From IMG/VR virus record IMGVR_UViG_3300037042_006844, positions 1 through 64,000 of that record: 64,000 nucleotides of DNA. The stretch is one strand, 5' to 3'. Positions 12,571 through 32,238 of the stretch are shown in pieces. The stretch's first letter is position 1, and every line of letters begins with the position of its first letter. A model generated the notes under the pieces. That model was not told the DNA's origin, searched no databases, and worked only from the letters and a program-made list of their open reading frames with translations. The position numbers were made by a program, and so were the translations under genes.

Positions 12571-13344
12571 ATGGCAGAGTCCTATTGCGACACATCACTA
12601 ATTTATTTGGAGCCAATCAGCAAACCGATTGCCCGCAGCATGATCGAAAAAAACCACTATAGTCACAAGTGGTCTTGCTGCACCGTGGCTTACGGGGTTT
12701 TCTACAAAGAATACATCGAAAGCACATTTTTCGGTGGTTATCAGAGTAAACTAATCGGAGTATTGGTTTATGGAAATGCAGTGGGAAGATGCGCCAGCAA
12801 AAGCATCAGTCCTCTATTAGCCAACGATAATGTATTTGAACTCACCCGCTTGTGGGTCGCAGATGGCTATGGAAAAAACATAGAAAGTTATTGTATAGCT
12901 GAAAGCTTTCGGTTGTTAAACAAAGAATATCCCAAAATCAAATGCATATTGACCTATGCTGATAGCGAAGAAGGTCATCGTGGCATCATCTATCAAGCAT
13001 CTGGATTTATTTATCAAGGGGACAATTACGTCGATATTGCAATTATGCCGAACTACAGTGTAAGTTTGGACGGTCCTCCGAGCTACAAATGGATTCATAG
13101 TCGCAGTGTGTATAACCGATGGAAATCACACAATGTTGACAAGCTGAAAGAACGAATCGGCAAAACGTTTTGGCGCAAACGTGAAAGCGGAAAGCATCGC
13201 TATGTCAAATTCATTTGTGGCAAAATTGAAAACAAACGACTCAGAAAATCTTTGAAACACAAAGAATTGCCGTATCCAAAAGGTGCGATTTTCAAAGAAG
13301 TTGTCACTGAACACGTTGTGGACAGTTCACAGTCTTTCTTCTAA
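12571..13344 (+). CDS. Mom-like (GNAT-fold) DNA adenine modification protein
   Basis: KNHYSH, LIGVLVYG, FELTRLW, ILTYADSEEGHRGIIYQASGF, and K.RY motifs characteristic of phage Mom-like proteins. Confidence 0.8.
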   Translation: MAESYCDTSLIYLEPISKPIARSMIEKNHYSHKWSCCTVAYGVFYKEYIESTFFGGYQSKLIGVLVYGNAVGRCASKSISPLLANDNVFELTRLWVADGYGKNIESYCIAESFRLLNKEYPKIKCILTYADSEEGHRGIIYQASGFIYQGDNYVDIAIMPNYSVSLDGPPSYKWIHSRSVYNRWKSHNVDKLKERIGKTFWRKRESGKHRYVKFICGKIENKRLRKSLKHKELPYPKGAIFKEVVTEHVVDSSQSFF

Positions 13345-13779: not shown

Positions 13780-15768
13780 TTAAATTTCAACAATGGCCTC
13801 TCGTTTATTTGCAGAATTTTTATCAAAATGACTTGTGTTTGATACTATATACGAGTTTATATTGGTCCAATTCAGCCGTTCGCTTAATTCGCTGGACACA
13901 TTAATGTAACATTTCTTACCCGAATATTTTTCAATTGCGGCGATGAACGTATTTTTCCAATCATTAAACGATCCGTGCGCAGTGCTGTTGCTGTAAATCT
14001 CAAGATCGTAATACGGAATGCTAGTAAAAATCAAATCAAACCGACGATCTGTTGAAAACTCCTCAAATTTACAATTGTGAATTTCTACATTGGTTAAATT
14101 TGCATTTTTAATAAAAGTCTGCAATTCACCGAATGTTTCAACGTTTGGTTCACATCCGATATACGTGCCATTTGGATATTTACTCTTAAATCCCAATAAT
14201 CTGCCGCCAAATCCACAACACGGGTCCAATACCACAGGCGAGGCCGTGTCCCCCAAATATTTGTGATATATTGCGGCTGCTAATAGCGGCTTAAAAAATG
14301 AAACGGTTATTCTTCTGGCAGACAAACCCTGTATCAATTGGTGTAAACTAAAATCAAATATTTCGCCACTATTATTACAACCGATTCTGTATTTTATAAC
14401 ATCGTGCATGATAGATTCGTCCTCCCACGCAGTTTTCGGCGCAACGTTACCTTTATAACTCGCTCCCCAGTAAGAATGGAAATGATGCTTCAAATAATTA
14501 TTGCCGATTGAATAAATATTGTTTGAAAATTCATTGGATTGCGCATTGTAAATCGATGTATAATCATATTCTCTAATTTTGCGCATAACCAATTCTATGC
14601 TCTCATATAACGGGGGATATGGAAATTCCGGTTGGAAATTGCGAATGAATTTTTTAAGCAACCACAAAAATGACTCAACGTAAGGTTGACCTTTGTCGAT
14701 AATGCAATTTGAAAAATATTCTTTATTTATTACCACATCGTCATATCCTAATACCAAATGGTTAATTTTATTATAACATGCTATATTTTTGATCAAATCG
14801 GTCTCACTGCGCGAGTTCGTTATGAGTGCAGACAAATCACTTTCGCGAATTCTATAAATATTATCGATGGTATTATTTTTTTGGCGATCCGATATAACAC
14901 TAGATAGCAGCTTAAAATTCAAATTTTCAATATTTGTTGGATGCCAATATTCGCCATCGATTTCAATGCACATATTGTGATCCTGTAAATAAAAATCAAC
15001 AGACGCGGACCTATCACCACAATCAACTACGTATGGATGTTTATATTTAATATTAAGAGAATTTAATAATGATTCAAAACATAGTTCTGGTTCTGTATCA
15101 ATAGTATTTATGGCACATTTTCTATTAACTGCACTATCCGACATTTTTTTGACAGCAGTTCGTTTATGCGTTTTACCATACATCGGATTATTGATTCCTA
15201 TTGAATTGTGCCCGGTAATATAATCGATTCTATATGGGTAGTAGTTTAACAACTTAACCGTTTTACCACACCCACATTCACACAGTGGGTGTGTATTATT
15301 AAATATGTGTTGTTTGACATAGGTCGGTTTGTCCAATTTGTGTATTTTTTTAATGTGCCAGCCCAGCAAATTACCGGAAGCAAATTGTTCTCCACAGATC
15401 ACACACGAATGTTTATTTTCTGTAGACATTAACCTATTTTTATATTCAATATTTTTAAGTTTGGATGAGCGATATTCACCACAGCGAATAACATAATCAT
15501 CTGGCGATATGCTATGTGTGTCCCTCAGATGAACAAAAAATCCAACCGAAGAATACTTGTTATTGCACAATTTACACTCAATTTTATTGACAGACCTAAT
15601 ATGCGTTTTACTTTTTTGTTTTCTAAACTCGCCGTATTTACATGCGTATTTATCGGATGTCAGTGCATGTTTCCATTTCAAATGACTTGAAAAGCTGTAT
15701 AATGAAATTTTTTCGCCGCAAATATCACAAGATTTCAACGACGGTTTATTAACAATAGCGCGACTCAT
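13780..15768 (-). CDS. Zn-finger/NUMOD3/DUF559-like endonuclease fused to a C-terminal SAM-dependent DNA amino-methyltransferase (likely start MSRAIV at 15768)
   Basis: Three CxxC..H..H fingers, CECGCG, GINNPMYGKTH (NUMOD3-like), TEPE...VDFY...IEIDGEYWH nuclease core, VLDPCCGFGGRLLG (motif I), GCEPN, DLIFTSIPYYDLEIY (motif IV-like). Confidence 0.8.
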   Translation of the reverse strand: MSRAIVNKPSLKSCDICGEKISLYSFSSHLKWKHALTSDKYACKYGEFRKQKSKTHIRSVNKIECKLCNNKYSSVGFFVHLRDTHSISPDDYVIRCGEYRSSKLKNIEYKNRLMSTENKHSCVICGEQFASGNLLGWHIKKIHKLDKPTYVKQHIFNNTHPLCECGCGKTVKLLNYYPYRIDYITGHNSIGINNPMYGKTHKRTAVKKMSDSAVNRKCAINTIDTEPELCFESLLNSLNIKYKHPYVVDCGDRSASVDFYLQDHNMCIEIDGEYWHPTNIENLNFKLLSSVISDRQKNNTIDNIYRIRESDLSALITNSRSETDLIKNIACYNKINHLVLGYDDVVINKEYFSNCIIDKGQPYVESFLWLLKKFIRNFQPEFPYPPLYESIELVMRKIREYDYTSIYNAQSNEFSNNIYSIGNNYLKHHFHSYWGASYKGNVAPKTAWEDESIMHDVIKYRIGCNNSGEIFDFSLHQLIQGLSARRITVSFFKPLLAAAIYHKYLGDTASPVVLDPCCGFGGRLLGFKSKYPNGTYIGCEPNVETFGELQTFIKNANLTNVEIHNCKFEEFSTDRRFDLIFTSIPYYDLEIYSNSTAHGSFNDWKNTFIAAIEKYSGKKCYINVSSELSERLNWTNINSYIVSNTSHFDKNSANKREAIVEI

Positions 15769-15775
15769 GTGTATA

Positions 15776-15804
15776 ACTATACACGATACGCTAAGAAAAT
15801 GCAA
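15776..15804 (-). promoter_or_regulatory. sigma70-like promoter of the endonuclease-methyltransferase gene
   Basis: TTGCAT (15804-15799), 17-nt spacer, TATAGT (15781-15776); ATG follows 7 nt later. Confidence 0.6.
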
Positions 15805-26828: not shown

Positions 26829-28037
26829 TTATAACAACCAAGTTAGTGACTCTTTTTTGCCAGTATGCGCTGCGCCGGTGTCGAATTTCCAAGTTTCTTG
26901 AGGAGATTGGATGATTTTGGTCTGACTTGCGGGTCCTGGAGTAGTGTTTACCACCTTTTTAATGCCACTCAGCATGGTGCGTGTGTATAGCATTTGCTCG
27001 GTTCGTATTTTTAATGCGGTGTCTCGCACCCAAAGACCAATACCCAACGACATCACAAGATCGTCGTTATAGCCTTTCATTGCTTCAGCTTTAGCACCGT
27101 TCCAAATAAACACATTAAGCTCTTCGTAAAGACGGACACTACGAATTACAATTTGTTGTTCACGGAAAAACGCCTCCATTTTGTTGATAATGAGTTGGCG
27201 GTTGATGTTTGTCGTTGTGAATCCGGGAACTGCTTTTTTCTCAGTATTATTGAGTTTATTGCTATAAGTTCGCTCTATATCGACAACTTTTAGATCAGAT
27301 GAACTGTAAAAAAGATTTTGGTATTCTCTGTCTATAATTTGCTGCAACGATGCCCAACCAATGTTATTGTTTTCAACGACCAACAAAGCATTGTTATATT
27401 CAGTTGCCACTGTTACCAACAAATTTCCAAAATCTTTGGTTGTAATCTGCCCTTTATATTCCGCAACTTGCTCCAAAGTTTCAACGTCAAATACATGAAA
27501 CGCGCTAAAATCCGCTCCGTCGCCGCGAGCGCAGTCGGCAGATATCATATAGTTTTTGCTGTAATCAGGACGTTCCCATATCCACAAATCCTGTGTGGCA
27601 CCACGTTTTTCAATGGGGTCTTTGATATAAGTTTTTTTGTAAAACTCCAAGACATCGACTGAGACGACTTGATTTCCAGATGTGCTGAAATCACAATTAT
27701 GCGATACAATTCCATCTACATTGAATATATTGCCGTTGCCGACATTTACAATATCATATAAATCGATTGCGGCATCGACTTTCGTAATGGATATAACTTC
27801 GATATCCGCGCCATCAACTCCTGTTATTTTTGAGCCAATTTTTATATCGCACGAACGAATTTCTATTGAATTAAAAATAAAAGGATGATTATCAGAACAC
27901 TTTATCGTCTTGCCATTACTCAAAAATATGACATAATGACAATCTTTTTTTAGCTTTCTAATACCCAAAAAATTTTGATATCCAGAAGGAGTGAGAATCT
28001 GGAATCTTGTGTTAAGCTTAACGTCAGGGATGTTCAT
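26829..28037 (-). CDS. gp17: Terminase large subunit C-terminal (nuclease) half with an N-terminal split-intein C-fragment
   Basis: IntC ending IVSHN followed by CDFSTSG; ISADCARGDGADFS, VVENNNIG, YNDDLVMS RNase-H-like terminase motifs. Confidence 0.92.
   Translation of the reverse strand: MNIPDVKLNTRFQILTPSGYQNFLGIRKLKKDCHYVIFLSNGKTIKCSDNHPFIFNSIEIRSCDIKIGSKITGVDGADIEVISITKVDAAIDLYDIVNVGNGNIFNVDGIVSHNCDFSTSGNQVVSVDVLEFYKKTYIKDPIEKRGATQDLWIWERPDYSKNYMISADCARGDGADFSAFHVFDVETLEQVAEYKGQITTKDFGNLLVTVATEYNNALLVVENNNIGWASLQQIIDREYQNLFYSSSDLKVVDIERTYSNKLNNTEKKAVPGFTTTNINRQLIINKMEAFFREQQIVIRSVRLYEELNVFIWNGAKAEAMKGYNDDLVMSLGIGLWVRDTALKIRTEQMLYTRTMLSGIKKVVNTTPGPASQTKIIQSPQETWKFDTGAAHTGKKESLTWLL
27696..28037 (-). 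mobile_element. Split intein C-fragment (114 aa)
   Basis: MNIPDVKLNTRFQILTPSG...CSDNHPF (block B)...LYDIVN (block F)...VSHN (block G). Confidence 0.88.
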
Positions 28038-28048
28038 AATGTATATGA

Positions 28049-28882
28049 TCAAATTAGATGAGAATATAAATTTTCTAATGAAATCTCATATTCGATACCA
28101 GTATTTTTATCTAGTATTTTAACTGTCGAATCCCCCCATAGACAATCGCATTCTTGAGCCGCCCCTTTTATGCCAGACAATTCGGTCTGTTGATCGCGCC
28201 ATGTTTGATCACGATCTGGATGCAAATTCCAAGGCAGACGAATGGTATTGAACTTGTTTTCACCGGCTTCGGCTGCCACCCACGTTTTATGGAAAAAATT
28301 ACCAACACCGTTTGGCGTTGATAATATGATCGCACGACCGCCGGTTGAAAGAGTGTATTGTGATGACAGCCAAATTTCTTCGATGTTGTCAATAAACGCG
28401 GCTTCGTCAATAATCAGCACAGAGAGTGCTGCTGAACGACCTGCGGTTCCCGCACTGGAAACAGCTTTGATTTGCGACCCGTTTTTGAGACGCAAGCTCA
28501 AACGGTTATCTTCCACGCACTGAACTTTCAACCACGCCGGAAGATTGTCATTTGCGAAACGAACTTTTGTGACAATTTCTTTGGCAGTTTCCTGAGTAAT
28601 GCTGATGATTAGAATATTTTTGTCGGTAAAAAACGTCATCAACCACAAACTATATGCTGCCGTTAGAGTGGAAATACCCATCTGACGACTTTTGAGAATG
28701 ATGTTGAGACTGTTTTCTACCAAATCTGTAAGAGCCTCTTCCTGAAATGGATACAAATCAAAATTACAGGTGCCGCGCACTGGATGTTGGATTTTCACAT
28801 ACTTCTTCATGAAGTATATGGGGTCTTCCAAACATCGTTTATACTCGGCTTTTATTAGCTCTCTGTAATTTTGCTGACTCAT
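28049..28882 (-). CDS. gp17: Terminase large subunit N-terminal (ATPase) half ending in a short split-intein N-fragment
   Basis: LYPFQ, LKSRQMGIS (Walker A), LIIDEAAF (Walker B), STPNG; then QECD followed by CLWGDST. Confidence 0.93.
   Translation of the reverse strand: MSQQNYRELIKAEYKRCLEDPIYFMKKYVKIQHPVRGTCNFDLYPFQEEALTDLVENSLNIILKSRQMGISTLTAAYSLWLMTFFTDKNILIISITQETAKEIVTKVRFANDNLPAWLKVQCVEDNRLSLRLKNGSQIKAVSSAGTAGRSAALSVLIIDEAAFIDNIEEIWLSSQYTLSTGGRAIILSTPNGVGNFFHKTWVAAEAGENKFNTIRLPWNLHPDRDQTWRDQQTELSGIKGAAQECDCLWGDSTVKILDKNTGIEYEISLENLYSHLI
28052..28144 (-). mobile_element. Split intein N-fragment (31 aa)
   Basis: CLWGDSTVKILDKNTGIEYEISLENLYSHLI-stop; block A only. Confidence 0.88.
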
Positions 28883-29489
28883 AATTCCCTTCTAATTCCG
28901 CAATGAACCCGTCAAGTTCTGCCAACCGAGCATTGATAATGGCGAGGTCTCTAGAGACATCTTCCTGGATTTTGCCCAAATCCGCACTGGTTTCCCACTT
29001 TTCAATAGTGCCATCTTCGTTGATAAATTCCAATGGCTTTCCTGTATGATCAACGCACCATTTCAACGTCTCGTCAAATTTCTTTTTGTATTCGCCCAAA
29101 ACACTGCGCTCGTTGCGAAGATCGCGGGCTTTATCAAAAAAGTCCCACGTTCCTTCCAGCTTCATTTGCGTTTCATTTTTTATAAAACAATCGTAACAAA
29201 ACTGAGTTTTTGGCCAAACTCGATCATCAAGATAATTTCCCCATCGAACATCGCAATTACAACCTTTGCAACGTTTTTCGATAATGATCGATTTTTTTGG
29301 AACTCGGCGTTTTTTACCGTCTTTCAAAACCCACTTTTTTCCACTGCTATCCTCCCATTCTTCACCCTCTTTACGAGTTGAATCATTGAGACTTTCAGTA
29401 TAACCAATTTGTATAAACGGACGACTACCATCTATATAGTCTTTGACAATAGCAAGATTACTTTTACCTTGAGCTTTCTTCATAACCAA
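28839..29489 (-). CDS. Hypothetical protein upstream of terminase, with a CxxC..CxxC motif
   Basis: CKGC...CYDC; overlaps the terminase start. Confidence 0.65.
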   Translation of the reverse strand: MVMKKAQGKSNLAIVKDYIDGSRPFIQIGYTESLNDSTRKEGEEWEDSSGKKWVLKDGKKRRVPKKSIIIEKRCKGCNCDVRWGNYLDDRVWPKTQFCYDCFIKNETQMKLEGTWDFFDKARDLRNERSVLGEYKKKFDETLKWCVDHTGKPLEFINEDGTIEKWETSADLGKIQEDVSRDLAIINARLAELDGFIAELEGNYESAKLQRANKSRV

Positions 29490-29501
29490 TATGTATTTGT
29501 T

Positions 29502-30554
29502 TTATTTACCAAAACCACTTTGTAGACCTTTAATGATGAACCCCCCAGTTATTTTATATGGTTTGCTATGAATGCTTGGATCGCGCACCACAATGCCTTC
29601 ATGCTTCTCCAAATCCCCAATTTCACTGGTGGCATTTTTAAGGATTTCATCGCCCAATTTGACCGTTGCGATGTAAACGATTGTATCATTAATGATCTTT
29701 TTGATATCTTCACCTTGAAAATCGGCACTGATATTTTTGCTGTCTGAAGCTTTGACAAACTGCTCACGGGTAATCAATGGAGTTTGAATGCTAATACCTT
29801 TCAGCCAATCTTTGAGAGATTTGGTAACGGGATTGCCGTCTGGATATAACGTAACTTTTTCACCCAATGGTCTGGTTAGATTTGGATTGGATTTGAACGT
29901 TGTGCCAATGCTGCCCAAAACTTTGAATCCGTATTTTTTAGCGACCGCATTCAATTTGTTGATGTAACTTTGCATTGCATCGTGGTCATAGTTGATTTCG
30001 GTTGCCACACGGCTTTTTACTTGCCCATCCTTGCCAATATTTTTTGGTTTGATTTCTTTCAATCCGTGAATTGCCAGAAAATTTCCGATGTCGCCATACC
30101 CAACTACATTGGTTTGCCCTTCCACATATTCGATGTTCAACAAAATGTTAGGATTGTCGAGCATTCCCAATTTTTTCAATTCCGATTTGGTGCTGGGAAT
30201 TGCTGCGTCGAATATATTAAGCACTTTGGCACCAATTTTAACGAATCCGTGTTCTTGACCAGAGGCGGGATCAGTGGGCCAGCGTTTCGCCAAATCGTCG
30301 GGTCGCATTCCTTGAATATCGAACGGTTTGGCACTACCACGGTCCATAACGAATTGTCCTTTTGACAAACGAATACTGGCGTTTACACCGTCAATTTTGA
30401 CACTTCCTGCGCCTTTTTTAAGTGTTTCAATGGTTTTGACAAATACGTCCACCAATTGTTTTCCGTTGGCGGCAAAATCGAACGGGTGGTCCATATGCCC
30501 TCCCGCGCCGCCTTCGGTCAATACTTCATAGAGTAGATTATTTAACTTGATCAT
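29502..30554 (-). CDS. Ligase-like (covalent nucleotidyltransferase superfamily) protein
   Basis: VKIDGVN (motif I KxDG), LNIEYV (III), EGIVVR (IV), YKITG (V); N-terminal EGGAGGHMDHP. Confidence 0.6.
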   Translation of the reverse strand: MIKLNNLLYEVLTEGGAGGHMDHPFDFAANGKQLVDVFVKTIETLKKGAGSVKIDGVNASIRLSKGQFVMDRGSAKPFDIQGMRPDDLAKRWPTDPASGQEHGFVKIGAKVLNIFDAAIPSTKSELKKLGMLDNPNILLNIEYVEGQTNVVGYGDIGNFLAIHGLKEIKPKNIGKDGQVKSRVATEINYDHDAMQSYINKLNAVAKKYGFKVLGSIGTTFKSNPNLTRPLGEKVTLYPDGNPVTKSLKDWLKGISIQTPLITREQFVKASDSKNISADFQGEDIKKIINDTIVYIATVKLGDEILKNATSEIGDLEKHEGIVVRDPSIHSKPYKITGGFIIKGLQSGFGK

Positions 30555-30577: not shown

Positions 30578-30606
30578 AAAAAAACCCCGCCTTTTTAGTG
30601 GCGGGG
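30578..30606 (-). terminator. Terminator after the endonuclease-GNAT gene
   Basis: CCCCGCC-8 nt-GGCGGGG stem with a T-tract on the minus strand. Confidence 0.8.
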
Positions 30607-30634
30607 CTGTTTAGGCTATCTCAGTGTTGTCAAT

Positions 30635-32143
30635 TCACATAGGTCGAGTCCACTCAAACTTAAAATGCCCGCAATCCCATATTCTGTCATATCCATTTAT
30701 TTGCATATTTTTCCATTCGCTCAAATTTGTGTCAAATTGTTTGAGTTTTTTATTGAGCTTATGCTTTTGAAAGTGCGATCTGCCAATTGGAACACAATTA
30801 TTTGTATGGAAATAATGATACCCAGCTGGTGTATGTGACACAAATCTCATGCCTATATTTTTATACACGGACCCAGTAAATAATCTTTTATCGGAGTATG
30901 TTACTACTGAATTAACATCGTAATTTTTTACAAAGTGCGCAAACAATTTAGATGCACCACCCACAATATGCGTATTGAGAGTATTGCAATAACGAGATAA
31001 TTCATATTGATATTTTTTATCGTATCTAGACTTGACAAACGTCATAATGGACAATAGAACGTCATCTTTATACAACCCGATTCTTATTGAAGATGTGTCA
31101 TCCCCCTGAATATGATTTTTGATTAAAAACTCCGTTTTATCAACGTTTGAAACTTCTTTAATTACGCATTTCCGAGCATGAAATTTCTCAGATTTTTTAA
31201 TTTTATTTAGCAATATACTTTTGACGATATCTTGTTTGCATTTCCACTCCCAATCCCAAATGTGCATCAATTCAATATTTTTTTCCGCACATCTATTTGT
31301 TTTCGACAAATGGTATTTTTTATTCTTTTTACCAGCCAACTCGCCATGCCAATATATGCCGTCGCATTCTATAGCCATATTTAACTGCGGCAGTAAAATA
31401 TCGATCTCCTCTCCGCCCAATATTGTTCTATCGTGTGGCTTTGTAACAACGTTATATTCATGCAAAAAACTCAAAATTTCTGTTTCTATGGAAGACGCGA
31501 ATCTGTTGTGTGGATTGCAATTCAAGCATCGAGGAATGTTCCCAGAATACAGATTATCTTCAAAATTATTGCCGCATTTACAACAAGTAAATTTGTATAG
31601 GGTATCATAAGAAGAACCGGCGTATTGTTCGCGGGTAAATAACGGGGTAACGATATTATGCAGCCTGCCCCCATCAAATATATCCGCCACGGTCTCGCTC
31701 GCAATTCTGGCGCGATGTTTTTCTTTAACAGCGTCCAATTGAGAAACGTTTGTAATATTATTATCGACTAAATATTGTTTATATTTTTTTGATTCGAATC
31801 CAATTTGCTTTGATTCGAGTCGTTTCTGTGTGCTTTTGAGTGTATTCGGAGATACATTCATGCCATATTTTTCATTATTCGTTTTTAGCATTTTATCGCG
31901 ATTATTGAAATGCTCGTCACCATATTTTTCCAATTTCGTGCGTTTTGCTTTTTCTAAATTGTTGTAATTTTCATCGCCGTATTTTTCTTTCAACGTAGAT
32001 TTCATGTTCAAAACCATTTTATCATACGCCCCATTTTCTCGTTTTTGGCGTATTTTGTCTTTGACATGTGGTAATTGCGATGGATGATACACACCATATT
32101 TTTTGAAAAAAGCGTCTCTTATTTTTTTACCTCGTTCGGTCAT
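30635..32143 (-). CDS. Hef-like free-standing endonuclease (DUF559-like core) fused to a C-terminal Mom-like GNAT domain (ATG at 32143)
   Basis: KYG repeats, CCKCG..CLNC Zn ribbon, SSIETE...EIDILLP...IECDGIYWHG nuclease core; NHIQG, ELSRY, VVTYSD, GSVYKNIGM; AAGGAG SD. Confidence 0.8.
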   Translation of the reverse strand: MTERGKKIRDAFFKKYGVYHPSQLPHVKDKIRQKRENGAYDKMVLNMKSTLKEKYGDENYNNLEKAKRTKLEKYGDEHFNNRDKMLKTNNEKYGMNVSPNTLKSTQKRLESKQIGFESKKYKQYLVDNNITNVSQLDAVKEKHRARIASETVADIFDGGRLHNIVTPLFTREQYAGSSYDTLYKFTCCKCGNNFEDNLYSGNIPRCLNCNPHNRFASSIETEILSFLHEYNVVTKPHDRTILGGEEIDILLPQLNMAIECDGIYWHGELAGKKNKKYHLSKTNRCAEKNIELMHIWDWEWKCKQDIVKSILLNKIKKSEKFHARKCVIKEVSNVDKTEFLIKNHIQGDDTSSIRIGLYKDDVLLSIMTFVKSRYDKKYQYELSRYCNTLNTHIVGGASKLFAHFVKNYDVNSVVTYSDKRLFTGSVYKNIGMRFVSHTPAGYHYFHTNNCVPIGRSHFQKHKLNKKLKQFDTNLSEWKNMQINGYDRIWDCGHFKFEWTRPM

Positions 32144-32170
32144 ATACAATACTCCTTATCTAATAGATAC

Positions 32171-32198
32171 ATATTAACACACATGTCAAAAATGTCAA
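32171..32198 (-). promoter_or_regulatory. sigma70-type promoter of the endonuclease-GNAT gene
   Basis: TTGACA (32198-93), 16-nt spacer, TGt-TAATAT (32176-71); a second TTGACA lies at 32189-84. Confidence 0.65.
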
Positions 32199-32208
32199 AA
32201 ATATAAAC

Positions 32209-32238
32209 AAAAAAGGAGAGCAATTTCTTGCTCTCCTT
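32209..32238 (-). terminator. Terminator after the tail sheath gene
   Basis: 11-bp stem AAGGAGAGCAA/TTGCTCTCCTT with a T-tract on the minus strand. Confidence 0.9.

What the first reader, a model, noticed from the sequence alone, without database searches (positions are those of the whole stretch)
30635..32143. Second nuclease-modifier fusion: DUF559-like endonuclease plus Mom-like acetyltransferase fold, behind the sheath gene
Seen: a Zn ribbon and IECDGIYWHG nuclease core are followed by a domain that aligns by eye with the stand-alone Mom-like protein at 12571 (NH, ELSRY vs ELTRL, VVTYSD vs ILTYAD, GSVYKNIGM vs GIIYQASGF). Known: Mu Mom modifies adenines and blocks restriction, and Hef-like phage proteins are usually annotated only as endonucleases. 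Inference: the same nuclease chassis is paired here with two chemically different DNA-modifying domains, suggesting a general 'cut plus mark' architecture with swappable modifier modules.
Basis: partly seen in the sequence, partly recalled or inferred. Interest (0 to 1): 0.75.

Follow-up and report, generated by a model that had tools for sequence, protein, structure and literature searches.

The report
Hef-type homing endonuclease with Mom-like domain

Summary
Observation confirmed. Window 30635..32143 (-) encodes a 502-aa protein with three parts: N-terminal helical repeats (DUF7487), a 4-Cys zinc ribbon plus a Vsr-like nuclease, and a 181-aa C-terminal GNAT domain.

- **Mom link:** pairwise BLASTP to the window's stand-alone Mom finds nothing. 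The Pfam Mom model hits 31 of 64 family members. The AlphaFold model (pLDDT 95) has Mu Mom (8BV8) as top Foldseek hit.
- **Mom active site:** the counterparts of Mu Mom H58, R111, D149, R151 and Y159 are 91-100% conserved over 266 diverse homologues. The S124 counterpart is 79% conserved.
- **Nuclease:** its closest structure is I-Bth0305I, the EDxHD homing endonuclease prototype.
- **Mobility:** the gene is a self-contained cassette (promoter-like site, RBS, terminator-like hairpins). It is present in only 6 of 44 closely related loci that hold both flanking genes, with a clean 1.56-kb insertion.
- **Interpretation partly supported:** nuclease and Mom-like domain are a fixed pair (145 of 146 representatives), not swappable. 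The methyltransferase fusion's nuclease is only a distant relative.
- **Prior knowledge:** REase-Mom fusions in jumbo phages were described in 2021, and Hef-type enzymes were placed in the Vsr-like homing family in 2011.

Verdict: a new member of a known kind. The function of the Mom-like domain is untested.

The parts
30635..32143 (-). Whole gene (502 codons plus stop): Hef-type homing endonuclease with a C-terminal Mom-like domain
   Evidence: ORF list and translation P0001. phrog_3339 'homing endonuclease' 1.8e-103 and phrog_559 3.8e-98 over nearly the full length. 2603 homologues at E<=1e-3 among 8000 scored candidates.
31619..32143 (-). N-terminal region, residues 1-175: helical repeats with a recurring KYG-x-EN(Y/F)NN motif (DUF7487); presumed DNA-binding arm
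   Evidence: Pfam DUF7487 E 9.8e-6, 26.1 bits against a cut-off of 27. The model shows eight helices between residues 3 and 156. This region varies from 0 to 750 aa among homologues. The DNA-binding role is inferred, not tested.
31517..31597 (-). Four-cysteine zinc ribbon, residues 183-209 (CxxC ... CxxC)
   Evidence: C187, C190, C206 and C209 are invariant in alignment A2. Weak Pfam Zn_ribbon_8 match.
31181..31492 (-). Vsr-like (EDxHD-type) PD-(D/E)XK nuclease domain, residues 218-321; D248, E259, D261, H266 and probably D298 are the active-site candidates
   Evidence: Foldseek top PDB hit is 3r3p, the I-Bth0305I catalytic domain (TM by target 0.77, rmsd 2.7), followed by Vsr 1cw0. The A2 profile against PDB gives 3r3p at E 0.006, with D248 and H266 falling on the two alanine columns of that chain; the paper names the mutants D196A and H213A. 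Weak Pfam MTES_1575 E 0.003. E246, D248, E259, H266 are invariant.
30638..31180 (-). Mom-like GNAT domain, residues 322-502, with a conserved helical insertion (about residues 447-484) between the last two core strands
   Evidence: AlphaFold2 model pLDDT 95.4. Foldseek top hit 8bv8 Mu Mom, E 5.7e-7, then generic GNATs. VIA-align Z 13.7 to 8bv8, within a field of GNATs at Z 13-14. hhalign to the Mom family 95%, E about 1e-8. Pfam Mom hits 31 of 64 family members. H344 100%, R384 99%, S398 79%, D418 92%, R420 91%, Y427 100% over 266 domains. Insertion residues R455, K460, L463, E476, N479, M480 are 96-99% conserved.
32171..32198 (-). Sigma-70-like promoter of the cassette (TTGACA, 16 nt, TG-n-TAATAT)
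   Evidence: 10 of 12 consensus matches with an extended -10 TG. The same sequence block opens the cassette in L078 and L061. This is a consensus match only; function not shown.
32152..32157 (-). Ribosome-binding site AAGGAG, 8 nt before the ATG at 32143
   Evidence: Read directly from the sequence. Conserved in L078 and L061.
32213..32238 (-). Terminator-like hairpin after the sheath gene; marks the left edge of the cassette
   Evidence: 11-bp stem plus T run. In relatives the cassette starts right after the equivalent hairpin.
30583..30608 (-). Terminator-like hairpin downstream of the gene's stop codon
   Evidence: 9-bp stem with 7 G-C pairs plus T run.
12571..13344 (+). Comparator, not part of the element: the stand-alone Mom homologue of the same phage
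   Evidence: Pfam Mom 1.5e-43 and phrog_1384 1.9e-44. Matches PDB 8bv8 at E 5.4e-13.

Best explanation
This is a free-standing, self-contained homing-endonuclease cassette of the Hef type in a roughly 300-kb phage. It sits between the tail-sheath gene and the next conserved gene.

Shown here:
- The protein is built of a variable N-terminal helical-repeat arm, a zinc ribbon, a Vsr-like (EDxHD-family) nuclease with its active-site residues present, and a Mom-family GNAT domain directly abutting the nuclease.
- The nuclease/Mom-like pair is a fixed two-domain unit across the sampled family.
- The gene is present or absent as a clean 1.56-kb cassette among near-identical relatives.

Inferred:
- In mixed infections the nuclease cuts cassette-less relatives near this locus, and recombinational repair copies the cassette in. 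It also excludes the competitor's nearby markers.
- The Mom-like domain is not a passenger. Its pocket residues (counterparts of Mu Mom H58, R111, D149, R151, Y159) and its helical insertion are under strong constraint.
- It most likely binds the target duplex, flips an adenine and transfers an acyl or aminoacyl group to N6 at or near the cleavage site. That would set which DNA copies can be cut (immunity of the carrier, or control of re-cleavage).
- The donor, aminoacyl-tRNA as in Mu Mom or acyl-CoA, cannot be told from sequence.

My confidence is about 0.9 for the identity (mobile Hef-type endonuclease plus Mom-family domain) and about 0.4 for catalytic adenine modification. The figure below is for the whole statement.
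For: Domains:
- phrog_3339 and phrog_559 full-length matches.
- Nuclease model closest to I-Bth0305I (3r3p), then Vsr. Catalytic columns align in the profile match, and E246, D248, E259, H266 are invariant.
- Taylor et al. 2011 place 'Hef type' phage endonucleases in this Vsr-like family (PMC3239194). U5 Hef cleaves nrdB (PMC2988022).

Mom link:
- hhalign 95%, E about 1e-8. Pfam Mom hits 31 of 64 members, best 2.6e-7. Foldseek top hit 8bv8.
- Mu key residues come from Silva et al. 2026 (PMC13219725). They were mapped through, and are conserved 91-100% (S398 79%) over 266 domains.
- The helical insertion lies at the same topological place as Mom's essential HTH-like insertion and is strongly conserved.

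Fixed pairing: 145 of 146 representatives.

Mobility:
- Of 44 related loci that hold both flanking genes, only 6 carry the gene.
- Exact cassette indels: L078 3927-5490 against 8 nt in L046, and L061 3530-5094 against 8 nt in L057, with flanks 91-97% identical.
- The cassette has its own promoter-like site, RBS and flanking terminator-like hairpins.
- The same intergenic spot holds other endonuclease-like genes in relatives.
- Up to 12 copies per Campylobacter phage genome.
Against: - No activity of any kind was measured; cleavage site and modification are inferences.
- This protein alone does not reach the Pfam Mom model. The Y59 counterpart is I/L, and the S124 counterpart is only 79% conserved.
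- By pure structural score Mom is no closer than many acetyltransferases: Z 13.7 against up to 14.0.
- A modification made in trans in a mixed infection would protect donor and recipient DNA alike. Immunity by modification is therefore not an obvious way to tell the two genomes apart.
- From memory, not checked here: Sandegren et al. 2005 reported that Hef cuts its own phage's DNA as well as the recipient's. I also know of no report of momylated adenine in phages that carry many Hef-like genes.
- Vsr-like endonucleases without any Mom domain occupy the same hot spot (L029, L048), so the nuclease type can work without it.
Confidence: 0.5

Rival explanations
1. The Mom-like domain is a catalytically silent, exapted module. 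It supplies DNA binding (groove contacts through the helical insertion, perhaps base flipping) and/or positions the nuclease, but transfers nothing. The protein is simply a three-part homing endonuclease.
For: - The protein alone misses the Pfam Mom model.
- The Y59 counterpart is replaced and the S124 counterpart varies (G, N, E in 21%).
- The tight nuclease-GNAT junction, with a linker of about 1 residue, suggests one structural unit.
- Related homing endonucleases use separate DNA-binding modules (PMC3239194).
- The most conserved stretch outside the core is the putative DNA-binding insertion.
Against: The counterparts of Mom's essential R111, D149, R151 and of H58 and Y159 are kept at 91-100% over 266 domains. 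Those domains are only about 40-75% identical to this one. The glycine-rich loop before helix 3 is also kept (G395 98%). Binding-only descendants of enzymes usually lose such residues.
Confidence: 0.28
2. 2021: a single-chain restriction-modification-like weapon. The Mom-like domain marks the phage's own adenines genome-wide, and the nuclease destroys unmarked host or superinfecting DNA. It would be one of several 'cut plus mark' fusions built on a common nuclease.
For: - Iyer et al. 2021 propose exactly this for jumbo-phage REase-Mom fusions (PMC7824862).
- The catalytic residues are conserved.
- The same genome has a Vsr-like nuclease fused to a SAM methyltransferase domain and a stand-alone Mom.
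Against: - The gene is absent from most close relatives and comes and goes as a precise cassette.
- The family reaches 10-12 paralogues per 130-kb genome, which fits selfish site-specific elements better than a genome-wide system.
- The founding member, Hef, is a site-specific endonuclease acting next to its own gene (PMC2988022).
- The modifier is not swappable within the family.
- The two nucleases in this genome are only distant relatives.
Confidence: 0.17
3. The Mom resemblance is chance or generic GNAT similarity, and the domain belongs to another acetyltransferase family with a non-DNA substrate.
For: - BLASTP finds nothing.
- VIA-align ranks ten ordinary acetyltransferases marginally above Mom.
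- The only PDB hit of the sequence profile is glyphosate N-acetyltransferase at E 1.1.
Against: - Among Pfam families only Mom is hit recurrently: 31 of 64 members, against 5 or fewer for any other family.
- hhalign gives 95% in the expected register.
- Foldseek ranks Mom first.
- The domain has an extra helical insertion at the place Silva et al. 2026 describe as atypical for GNATs in Mom.
- It is fused to a DNA nuclease in 145 of 146 cases.
Confidence: 0.03

Closest known systems
Hef / 'Hef-like' free-standing homing endonucleases of T4-related and other large phages (prototype: phage U5 Hef; annotated copies in Acj9, LIMEstone F-LimIII/VII/VIII/X, Campylobacter CP8/CP220 groups, RaK2)
   Same: The nuclease plus C-terminal domain aligns with these genes at 31-49% identity, and they share PHROG families. 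Lifestyle matches too: free-standing genes between conserved phage genes, and many copies per genome (PMC3296691).
   Different: The N-terminal arm differs in length and content. I could not obtain the U5 Hef sequence or paper. The link to the biochemically tested prototype therefore rests on database annotation and on Taylor et al. 2011.
I-Bth0305I and the EDxHD (Vsr-like) homing endonuclease family, PDB 3R3P
   Same: It is the closest solved structure to the nuclease domain. Catalytic columns align. Both have an N-terminal DNA-binding region followed by the nuclease.
   Different: I-Bth0305I is intron-encoded, ends with the nuclease domain and has no GNAT domain. Its N-terminus carries NUMOD motifs, not DUF7487 repeats or a zinc ribbon.
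Phage Mu Mom (PDB 8BV8), a tRNA-dependent adenine-N6 modifying GNAT
   Same: GNAT core plus a helical insertion before the last strand. The counterparts of H58, R111, S124, D149, R151 and Y159 are present.
   Different: Mom is a stand-alone protein of about 230 aa that forms a dimer. Here the domain is 181 aa, fused to a nuclease, with about 11-13% identity to Mom. The Y59 counterpart is I/L, and it carries a glycine-rich VIGGASK loop that Mu Mom lacks. Donor substrate, target and activity are unknown.
REase-Mom fusions of jumbo phages described by Iyer, Anantharaman, Krishnan, Burroughs and Aravind 2021 (Viruses 13:63)
   Same: The same architecture (REase-fold endoDNase plus Mom-family GNAT) in the same kind of genome. 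The paper credits PA5oct with five momylating enzymes. Separately, the Pseudomonas jumbo phage MIJ3 has five matching places here.
   Different: That paper reads them as restriction-modification-like conflict systems. The evidence here (cassette polymorphism, copy number, Hef precedent) points to homing elements. I could not check their supplementary lists.

Membership tests
Mom family (Pfam PF25680) within the GNAT superfamily | GNAT fold | tested here: met
   Model pLDDT 95.4. 75 PDB matches at E<=1e-3; all 50 listed rows are GNAT-type acetyltransferases or Mom. Z 13-14 by VIA-align.
Mom family (Pfam PF25680) within the GNAT superfamily | This protein scores above the curated Pfam Mom threshold (27.1 bits) | tested here: not met
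   No Mom hit for the whole protein or for residues 320-502, even at E<=10.
Mom family (Pfam PF25680) within the GNAT superfamily | Family-level homology to Mom (profile-profile, or transitive through family members) | tested here: met
   hhalign 95.3-95.6% probability, E 6e-9 to 1e-8. Pfam Mom matches 31 of 64 members, best E 2.6e-7.
Mom family (Pfam PF25680) within the GNAT superfamily | Residues needed for Mu Mom activity (H58, Y59, R111, S124, D149, R151, Y159) | tested here: met
   Six of seven have counterparts: H344 100%, R384 99%, S398 79%, D418 92%, R420 91%, Y427 100%. Y59 corresponds to I/L. The S398 assignment rests on spacing (R+14 here, R+13 in Mu) and on helix-3 position, not on a residue-level superposition.
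Mom family (Pfam PF25680) within the GNAT superfamily | Helical (HTH-like) insertion between the last core strands, essential in Mu Mom | tested here: inconclusive
   Three short helices (134-137, 139-145, 155-161 of the domain) lie between the strand at 120-125 and the strands at 164-169 and 172-178, and they are strongly conserved. Residue-level equivalence to Mom residues 175-209 was not established; hhalign confidence is low there.
Mom family (Pfam PF25680) within the GNAT superfamily | Transfers glycine from Gly-tRNA to adenine N6 in duplex DNA | not testable with these tools
   Needs biochemistry; see decisive next steps.
EDxHD / Vsr-like homing endonucleases (including Hef type) | Vsr-like nuclease fold | tested here: met
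   3r3p TM by target 0.77, rmsd 2.7; Vsr 1cw0 third.
EDxHD / Vsr-like homing endonucleases (including Hef type) | Conserved catalytic acidic and histidine residues | tested here: met
   In the HMMER alignment, D248 and H266 fall on the alanine columns of the 3r3p chain and D261 on its N. The paper identifies these as D196A, H213A and N208. E246, D248, E259 and H266 are invariant in 40 sequences.
EDxHD / Vsr-like homing endonucleases (including Hef type) | Mobile: present or absent at a fixed site among otherwise collinear genomes | tested here: met
   6 of 44 related loci with both flanking genes carry it. The 1,564-1,565-nt cassette replaces 8 nt, with flanks 91-97% identical.
EDxHD / Vsr-like homing endonucleases (including Hef type) | Site-specific cleavage close to its own locus, and homing in mixed infection | not testable with these tools
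Restriction-modification-like fusion (reading of Iyer et al. 2021) | Modification protects the carrier's DNA from the fused nuclease | not testable with these tools
   Needs modification mapping and cleavage assays on modified against unmodified DNA.

The most novel reading that the evidence does not exclude
The Mom-like domain is an active, site-directed adenine-N6 acyl or aminoacyl transferase built into a homing endonuclease. The selfish element would then write a chemical mark on its own target site, giving epigenetic immunity or a cut-once switch. If so, tens of thousands of 'Hef-like' genes would encode a so far unseen class of rare, site-specific DNA hypermodification, possibly tRNA-dependent.
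Probability: 0.3. Interest if true: 0.75.

Novelty: new member of a known kind. Interest (0 to 1): 0.38.

Why it matters
The gene itself is ordinary: one more Hef-type homing endonuclease in an uncultured jumbo phage. Three separate strands of literature connect here.
- Hef-like enzymes are known as homing endonucleases (2005, 2011).
- REase-Mom fusions are known as predicted conflict systems (2021).
- Mom is now known as a tRNA-dependent adenine modifier with defined catalytic residues (2026).

The residues shown to matter in Mu Mom are almost invariant in the endonuclease-fused domain. The family has at least 19,576 clusters at 50% identity. A direct experiment on any cultured homologue (Acinetobacter, Campylobacter or Klebsiella phages) could show whether homing endonucleases chemically mark DNA. 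That would change how target immunity of free-standing homing genes is understood.

Tried and rejected
- Pairwise BLASTP of residues 320-502 against the stand-alone Mom: nothing. Superseded by profile methods.
- Pfam, NCBIfam and PDB sequence searches with the single protein: no informative hit for the C-terminal domain. The C-terminal profile against PDB sequences gave only glyphosate acetyltransferase at E 1.1.
- AlphaFold DB Swiss-Prot fold search: generic acetyltransferases only; Mu Mom is not among the 30 listed rows.
- megablast of the region against GenBank phages: no match.
- Homodimer prediction of the Mom-like domain: no verdict, score 0.03. This is not evidence either way.
- The Sandegren et al. 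2005 paper (Hef) and Iyer et al. 2009 are not held. The supplements of Iyer et al. 2021 are not held.
- tRNA scan of the window, to look for a phage tRNA-Gly: none.
- Considered and rejected: that the two 'nuclease-modifier' proteins of this genome share one recent nuclease chassis. They match only at superfamily level.
- Considered and rejected: the TTG at 32149 as start. AAGGAG is spaced for the ATG at 32143.
Full report
**What is there.** The finding's coordinates hold one ORF on the minus strand, 30635..32143. It gives a 502-aa protein, P0001. AAGGAG lies 8 nt before the ATG at 32143.

The gene is flanked by signals of its own:
- A terminator-like hairpin at 32238-32213 follows the stop of the upstream 1328-aa gene.
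- A sigma-70-like promoter lies at 32198-32171 (10 of 12 matches, with an extended -10 TG).
- A second hairpin at 30608-30583 follows the gene's stop.

The upstream gene is a tail sheath (phrog_23, 2.3e-63). The window belongs to a 303,564-base IMG/VR virus record estimated 89% complete, so this is a jumbo phage.

**Domain anatomy.** PHROGs matches the whole protein to 'homing endonuclease' families: phrog_3339 at 1.8e-103 and phrog_559 at 3.8e-98. Pfam gives only weak hits: DUF7487 for residues 1-175, and MTES_1575, PvuRts1I-like and a zinc ribbon for residues 170-330. It gives nothing for residues 320-502.

In 40 homologues C187, C190, C206 and C209 are invariant, which makes a CxxC...CxxC zinc ribbon. 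E246, D248, E259, H266 and E268 are invariant as well.

An AlphaFold2 model of residues 1-325 (pLDDT 90.8) has as its best PDB match the catalytic domain of the homing endonuclease I-Bth0305I (3r3p). The TM-score by target is 0.77 and the rmsd 2.7. Vsr (1cw0) follows.

The sequence profile also finds 3r3p, at E 0.006. In that alignment D248 and H266 fall on the two alanine columns of the chain and D261 on its N. The paper names these D196A, H213A and N208. More precisely, it is the Vsr-like EDxHD homing-endonuclease fold with the catalytic residues present.

**The C-terminal domain and Mom.** The stand-alone protein at 12571..13344 is a clear Mom homologue: Pfam Mom 1.5e-43 and PDB 8bv8 at E 5.4e-13. 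Pairwise BLASTP between it and residues 320-502 finds nothing, so the by-eye alignment needed testing.

| Test | Result |
|---|---|
| hhalign, 266 more diverse domains | 95.3-95.6%, E 6e-9 to 1e-8 |
| Pfam Mom model on 64 family members | hits 31, best E 2.6e-7; no other family hits more than 5 |
| AlphaFold2 model of residues 322-502 | pLDDT 95.4, GNAT topology plus three extra short helices before the last strands |
| Foldseek against PDB | Mu Mom 8bv8 first (E 5.7e-7), then generic acetyltransferases |
| VIA-align against PDB | Mom Z 13.7, inside a field of GNATs at Z 13-14 |

The fold says GNAT. The sequence profiles say Mom.

**Are the Mom active-site residues kept?** Silva et al. 2026 (PMC13219725) show that Mu Mom uses Gly-tRNA(Gly). 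R111, S124 and R151 are essential, and alanine at D149 greatly reduced activity in earlier work they cite. H58, Y59, W48, Y159 and W181 are also important, and so is an HTH-like insertion (residues 175-209).

I mapped these residues through the Mu/P0002 alignment and the hhalign register. Over 266 domains the counterparts are conserved as follows:

| Mu Mom residue | Counterpart here | Conservation |
|---|---|---|
| H58 | H344 | 100% |
| Y59 | I/L | replaced |
| R111 | R384 | 99% |
| S124 | S398 | 79% |
| D149 | D418 | 92% |
| R151 | R420 | 91% |
| Y159 | Y427 | 100% |

The S398/S124 pairing rests on spacing and helix position, not on a residue-level superposition. The inserted helices are among the most conserved parts: R455, K460, L463, E476, N479 and M480 are at 96-99%.

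The loop before helix 3 reads VIGGASK (G395 98%). This is closer to the classical GNAT phosphate-binding loop than Mu Mom's sequence is. The acyl donor therefore cannot be inferred.

**Lifestyle: a mobile cassette.** I fetched 79 IMG/VR loci that encode the downstream 350-aa gene. Among the 44 that also contain the sheath gene's end, only six carry this gene: L009, L056, L060, L061, L062 and L078.

Near-isogenic pairs show exact insertions:
- L078 3927-5490 replaces 8 nt of L046.
- L061 3530-5094 replaces 8 nt of L057.
- The flanks are 91-97% identical.

The inserted block begins right after the sheath terminator with the same promoter/RBS block as in the window. It ends a few bases after the stop codon.

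The same intergenic spot holds other endonuclease-like genes in other relatives. One is a 247-aa Vsr-like protein without a Mom domain (L029, L048). Another is a 284-aa ORF that I read by eye as HNH-like and did not test (L061).

In GenBank phages the C-terminal domain occurs in 367 records at 884 places, up to 12 per Campylobacter phage genome. It is annotated 'Hef', 'Hef-like homing endonuclease' or 'homing endonuclease', and twice 'putative nuclease/acetyltransferase protein'. All of this is the signature of a free-standing homing endonuclease gene.

**Is the modifier swappable?** Among the 146 best cluster representatives carrying this C-terminal domain, 145 have the nuclease immediately upstream, with a median linker of 1 residue. 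The exception is a 181-aa protein that consists of the domain alone. The region before the nuclease ranges from 0 to 750 aa.

This sample is the best-scoring 150 of 19,576 clusters, so it leans towards close relatives.

The methyltransferase fusion at 13780..15804 (P0389) has a Vsr-type nuclease as well (Pfam Vsr 2.5e-4). It matches this one only distantly: E 2.5e-3 by sequence and 5.4e-6 by profile. A third paralogue, without a Mom domain, lies at about 283.8 kb of the genome.

The 'one chassis, swappable modifiers' idea therefore holds only at superfamily level. Within this family the nuclease and the Mom-like domain are an obligate pair, and the N-terminal arm is what varies.

**What is already known.**
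- Taylor et al. 2011 placed Hef-type phage endonucleases in the Vsr-like EDxHD family.
- Edgell et al. 2010 summarise that U5 Hef cleaves nrdB.
- Adriaenssens et al. 2012 list four free-standing Hef-like genes in LIMEstone1.
- Iyer et al. [quoted passage not shown] They read them as restriction-modification-like systems and credit PA5oct with five momylating enzymes. Separately, the Pseudomonas jumbo phage MIJ3 shows five matching places here.
- The 2026 Mom paper does not mention fusions.

The finding is a correct rediscovery. The one addition is that the residues now known to be essential in Mu Mom are kept in the endonuclease-fused branch.

**Most likely mechanism and rivals.**
- Best reading, confidence 0.5 for the whole statement. 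The gene is a homing cassette whose nuclease cuts cassette-less relatives near this locus, and the Mom-like domain takes part in handling the target. Identity as a mobile Hef-type endonuclease with a Mom-family domain is about 0.9. The domain most probably flips and acylates an adenine at or near the site, at about 0.4.
- Catalytically silent DNA-binding module, 0.28. It is favoured by the failure to reach the Pfam threshold and by the variable serine. It is disfavoured by the near-invariant pocket residues.
- Genome-wide restriction-modification-like weapon, 0.17. It is disfavoured by the cassette polymorphism, the copy numbers and the Hef precedent.
- Chance similarity, 0.03.

One conceptual difficulty for immunity by modification: a modifier acting in trans in a mixed infection would protect both genomes.

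From memory only, since the paper is not held: Sandegren et al. 2005 reported that Hef cuts its own phage's DNA too. That result would be compatible either with no protection or with protection that is lost on unmodified test DNA.

**Verdict.** This is a new member of a known kind, and the function of the Mom-like domain is still unknown and can be tested directly.

Noticed in passing
window 26829-28882 (-): The large terminase subunit is split over two ORFs that overlap by 4 nt (28049-28882 and 26829-28052). The first ends in a Cys-led stretch and the second contains '...VSHNC' before terminase sequence resumes. This looks like an intein, or an intein remnant with a frame break, inside the terminase gene. 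PHROG terminase hits lie on both ORFs.
   Followed up: no
window 13780-15804 (-): A 674-aa protein with several C2H2/BED-like zinc fingers, a NUMOD3-like motif, a Vsr-like nuclease (Pfam Vsr 2.5e-4) and a C-terminal SAM methyltransferase-like domain (Methyltransf_25 3.9e-5, below the cut-off; motifs GFGG and SIPYY). Its nuclease is only a distant relative of the one in the finding.
   Followed up: partly
window 12571-13344 (+): The stand-alone Mom homologue has E at the position of Mu Mom's essential R151 (YADSEEGHRG against FADERCGRAG). The endonuclease-fused domain keeps D-x-R there.
   Followed up: partly
G000 contig 1, 283802-284110 (-), outside the window (locus L003): A third Vsr-like nuclease paralogue (E 5.7e-5 by sequence, 1.6e-9 by profile) without a Mom-like domain. 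The match contains one in-frame TGA.
   Followed up: partly
relatives L005-L082, region between the sheath gene and the 350-aa gene: This intergenic site is a hot spot. Most relatives carry a conserved gene of about 255 aa, and often a 96-aa gene, that the window and L009 lack. Others add a 247-aa Vsr-like endonuclease (L029, L048), a 224-aa gene (L057), or a 284-aa ORF I read by eye as HNH-like, whose first ~20 residues repeat the start of the 350-aa gene (L061). L008 and L072 have about 2 kb of extra sequence with repetitive G/V-rich reading frames.
   Followed up: partly
window 29502-30554 (-) and 28839-29489 (-): The two conserved genes downstream of the cassette (350 aa and 216 aa) have no PHROG match at E<=1e-5. 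The 350-aa protein is nevertheless 63-83% identical across about 80 IMG/VR contigs.
   Followed up: no
window 1-64000: ARAGORN finds no tRNA or tmRNA gene in this 64-kb stretch of a jumbo phage.
   Followed up: no
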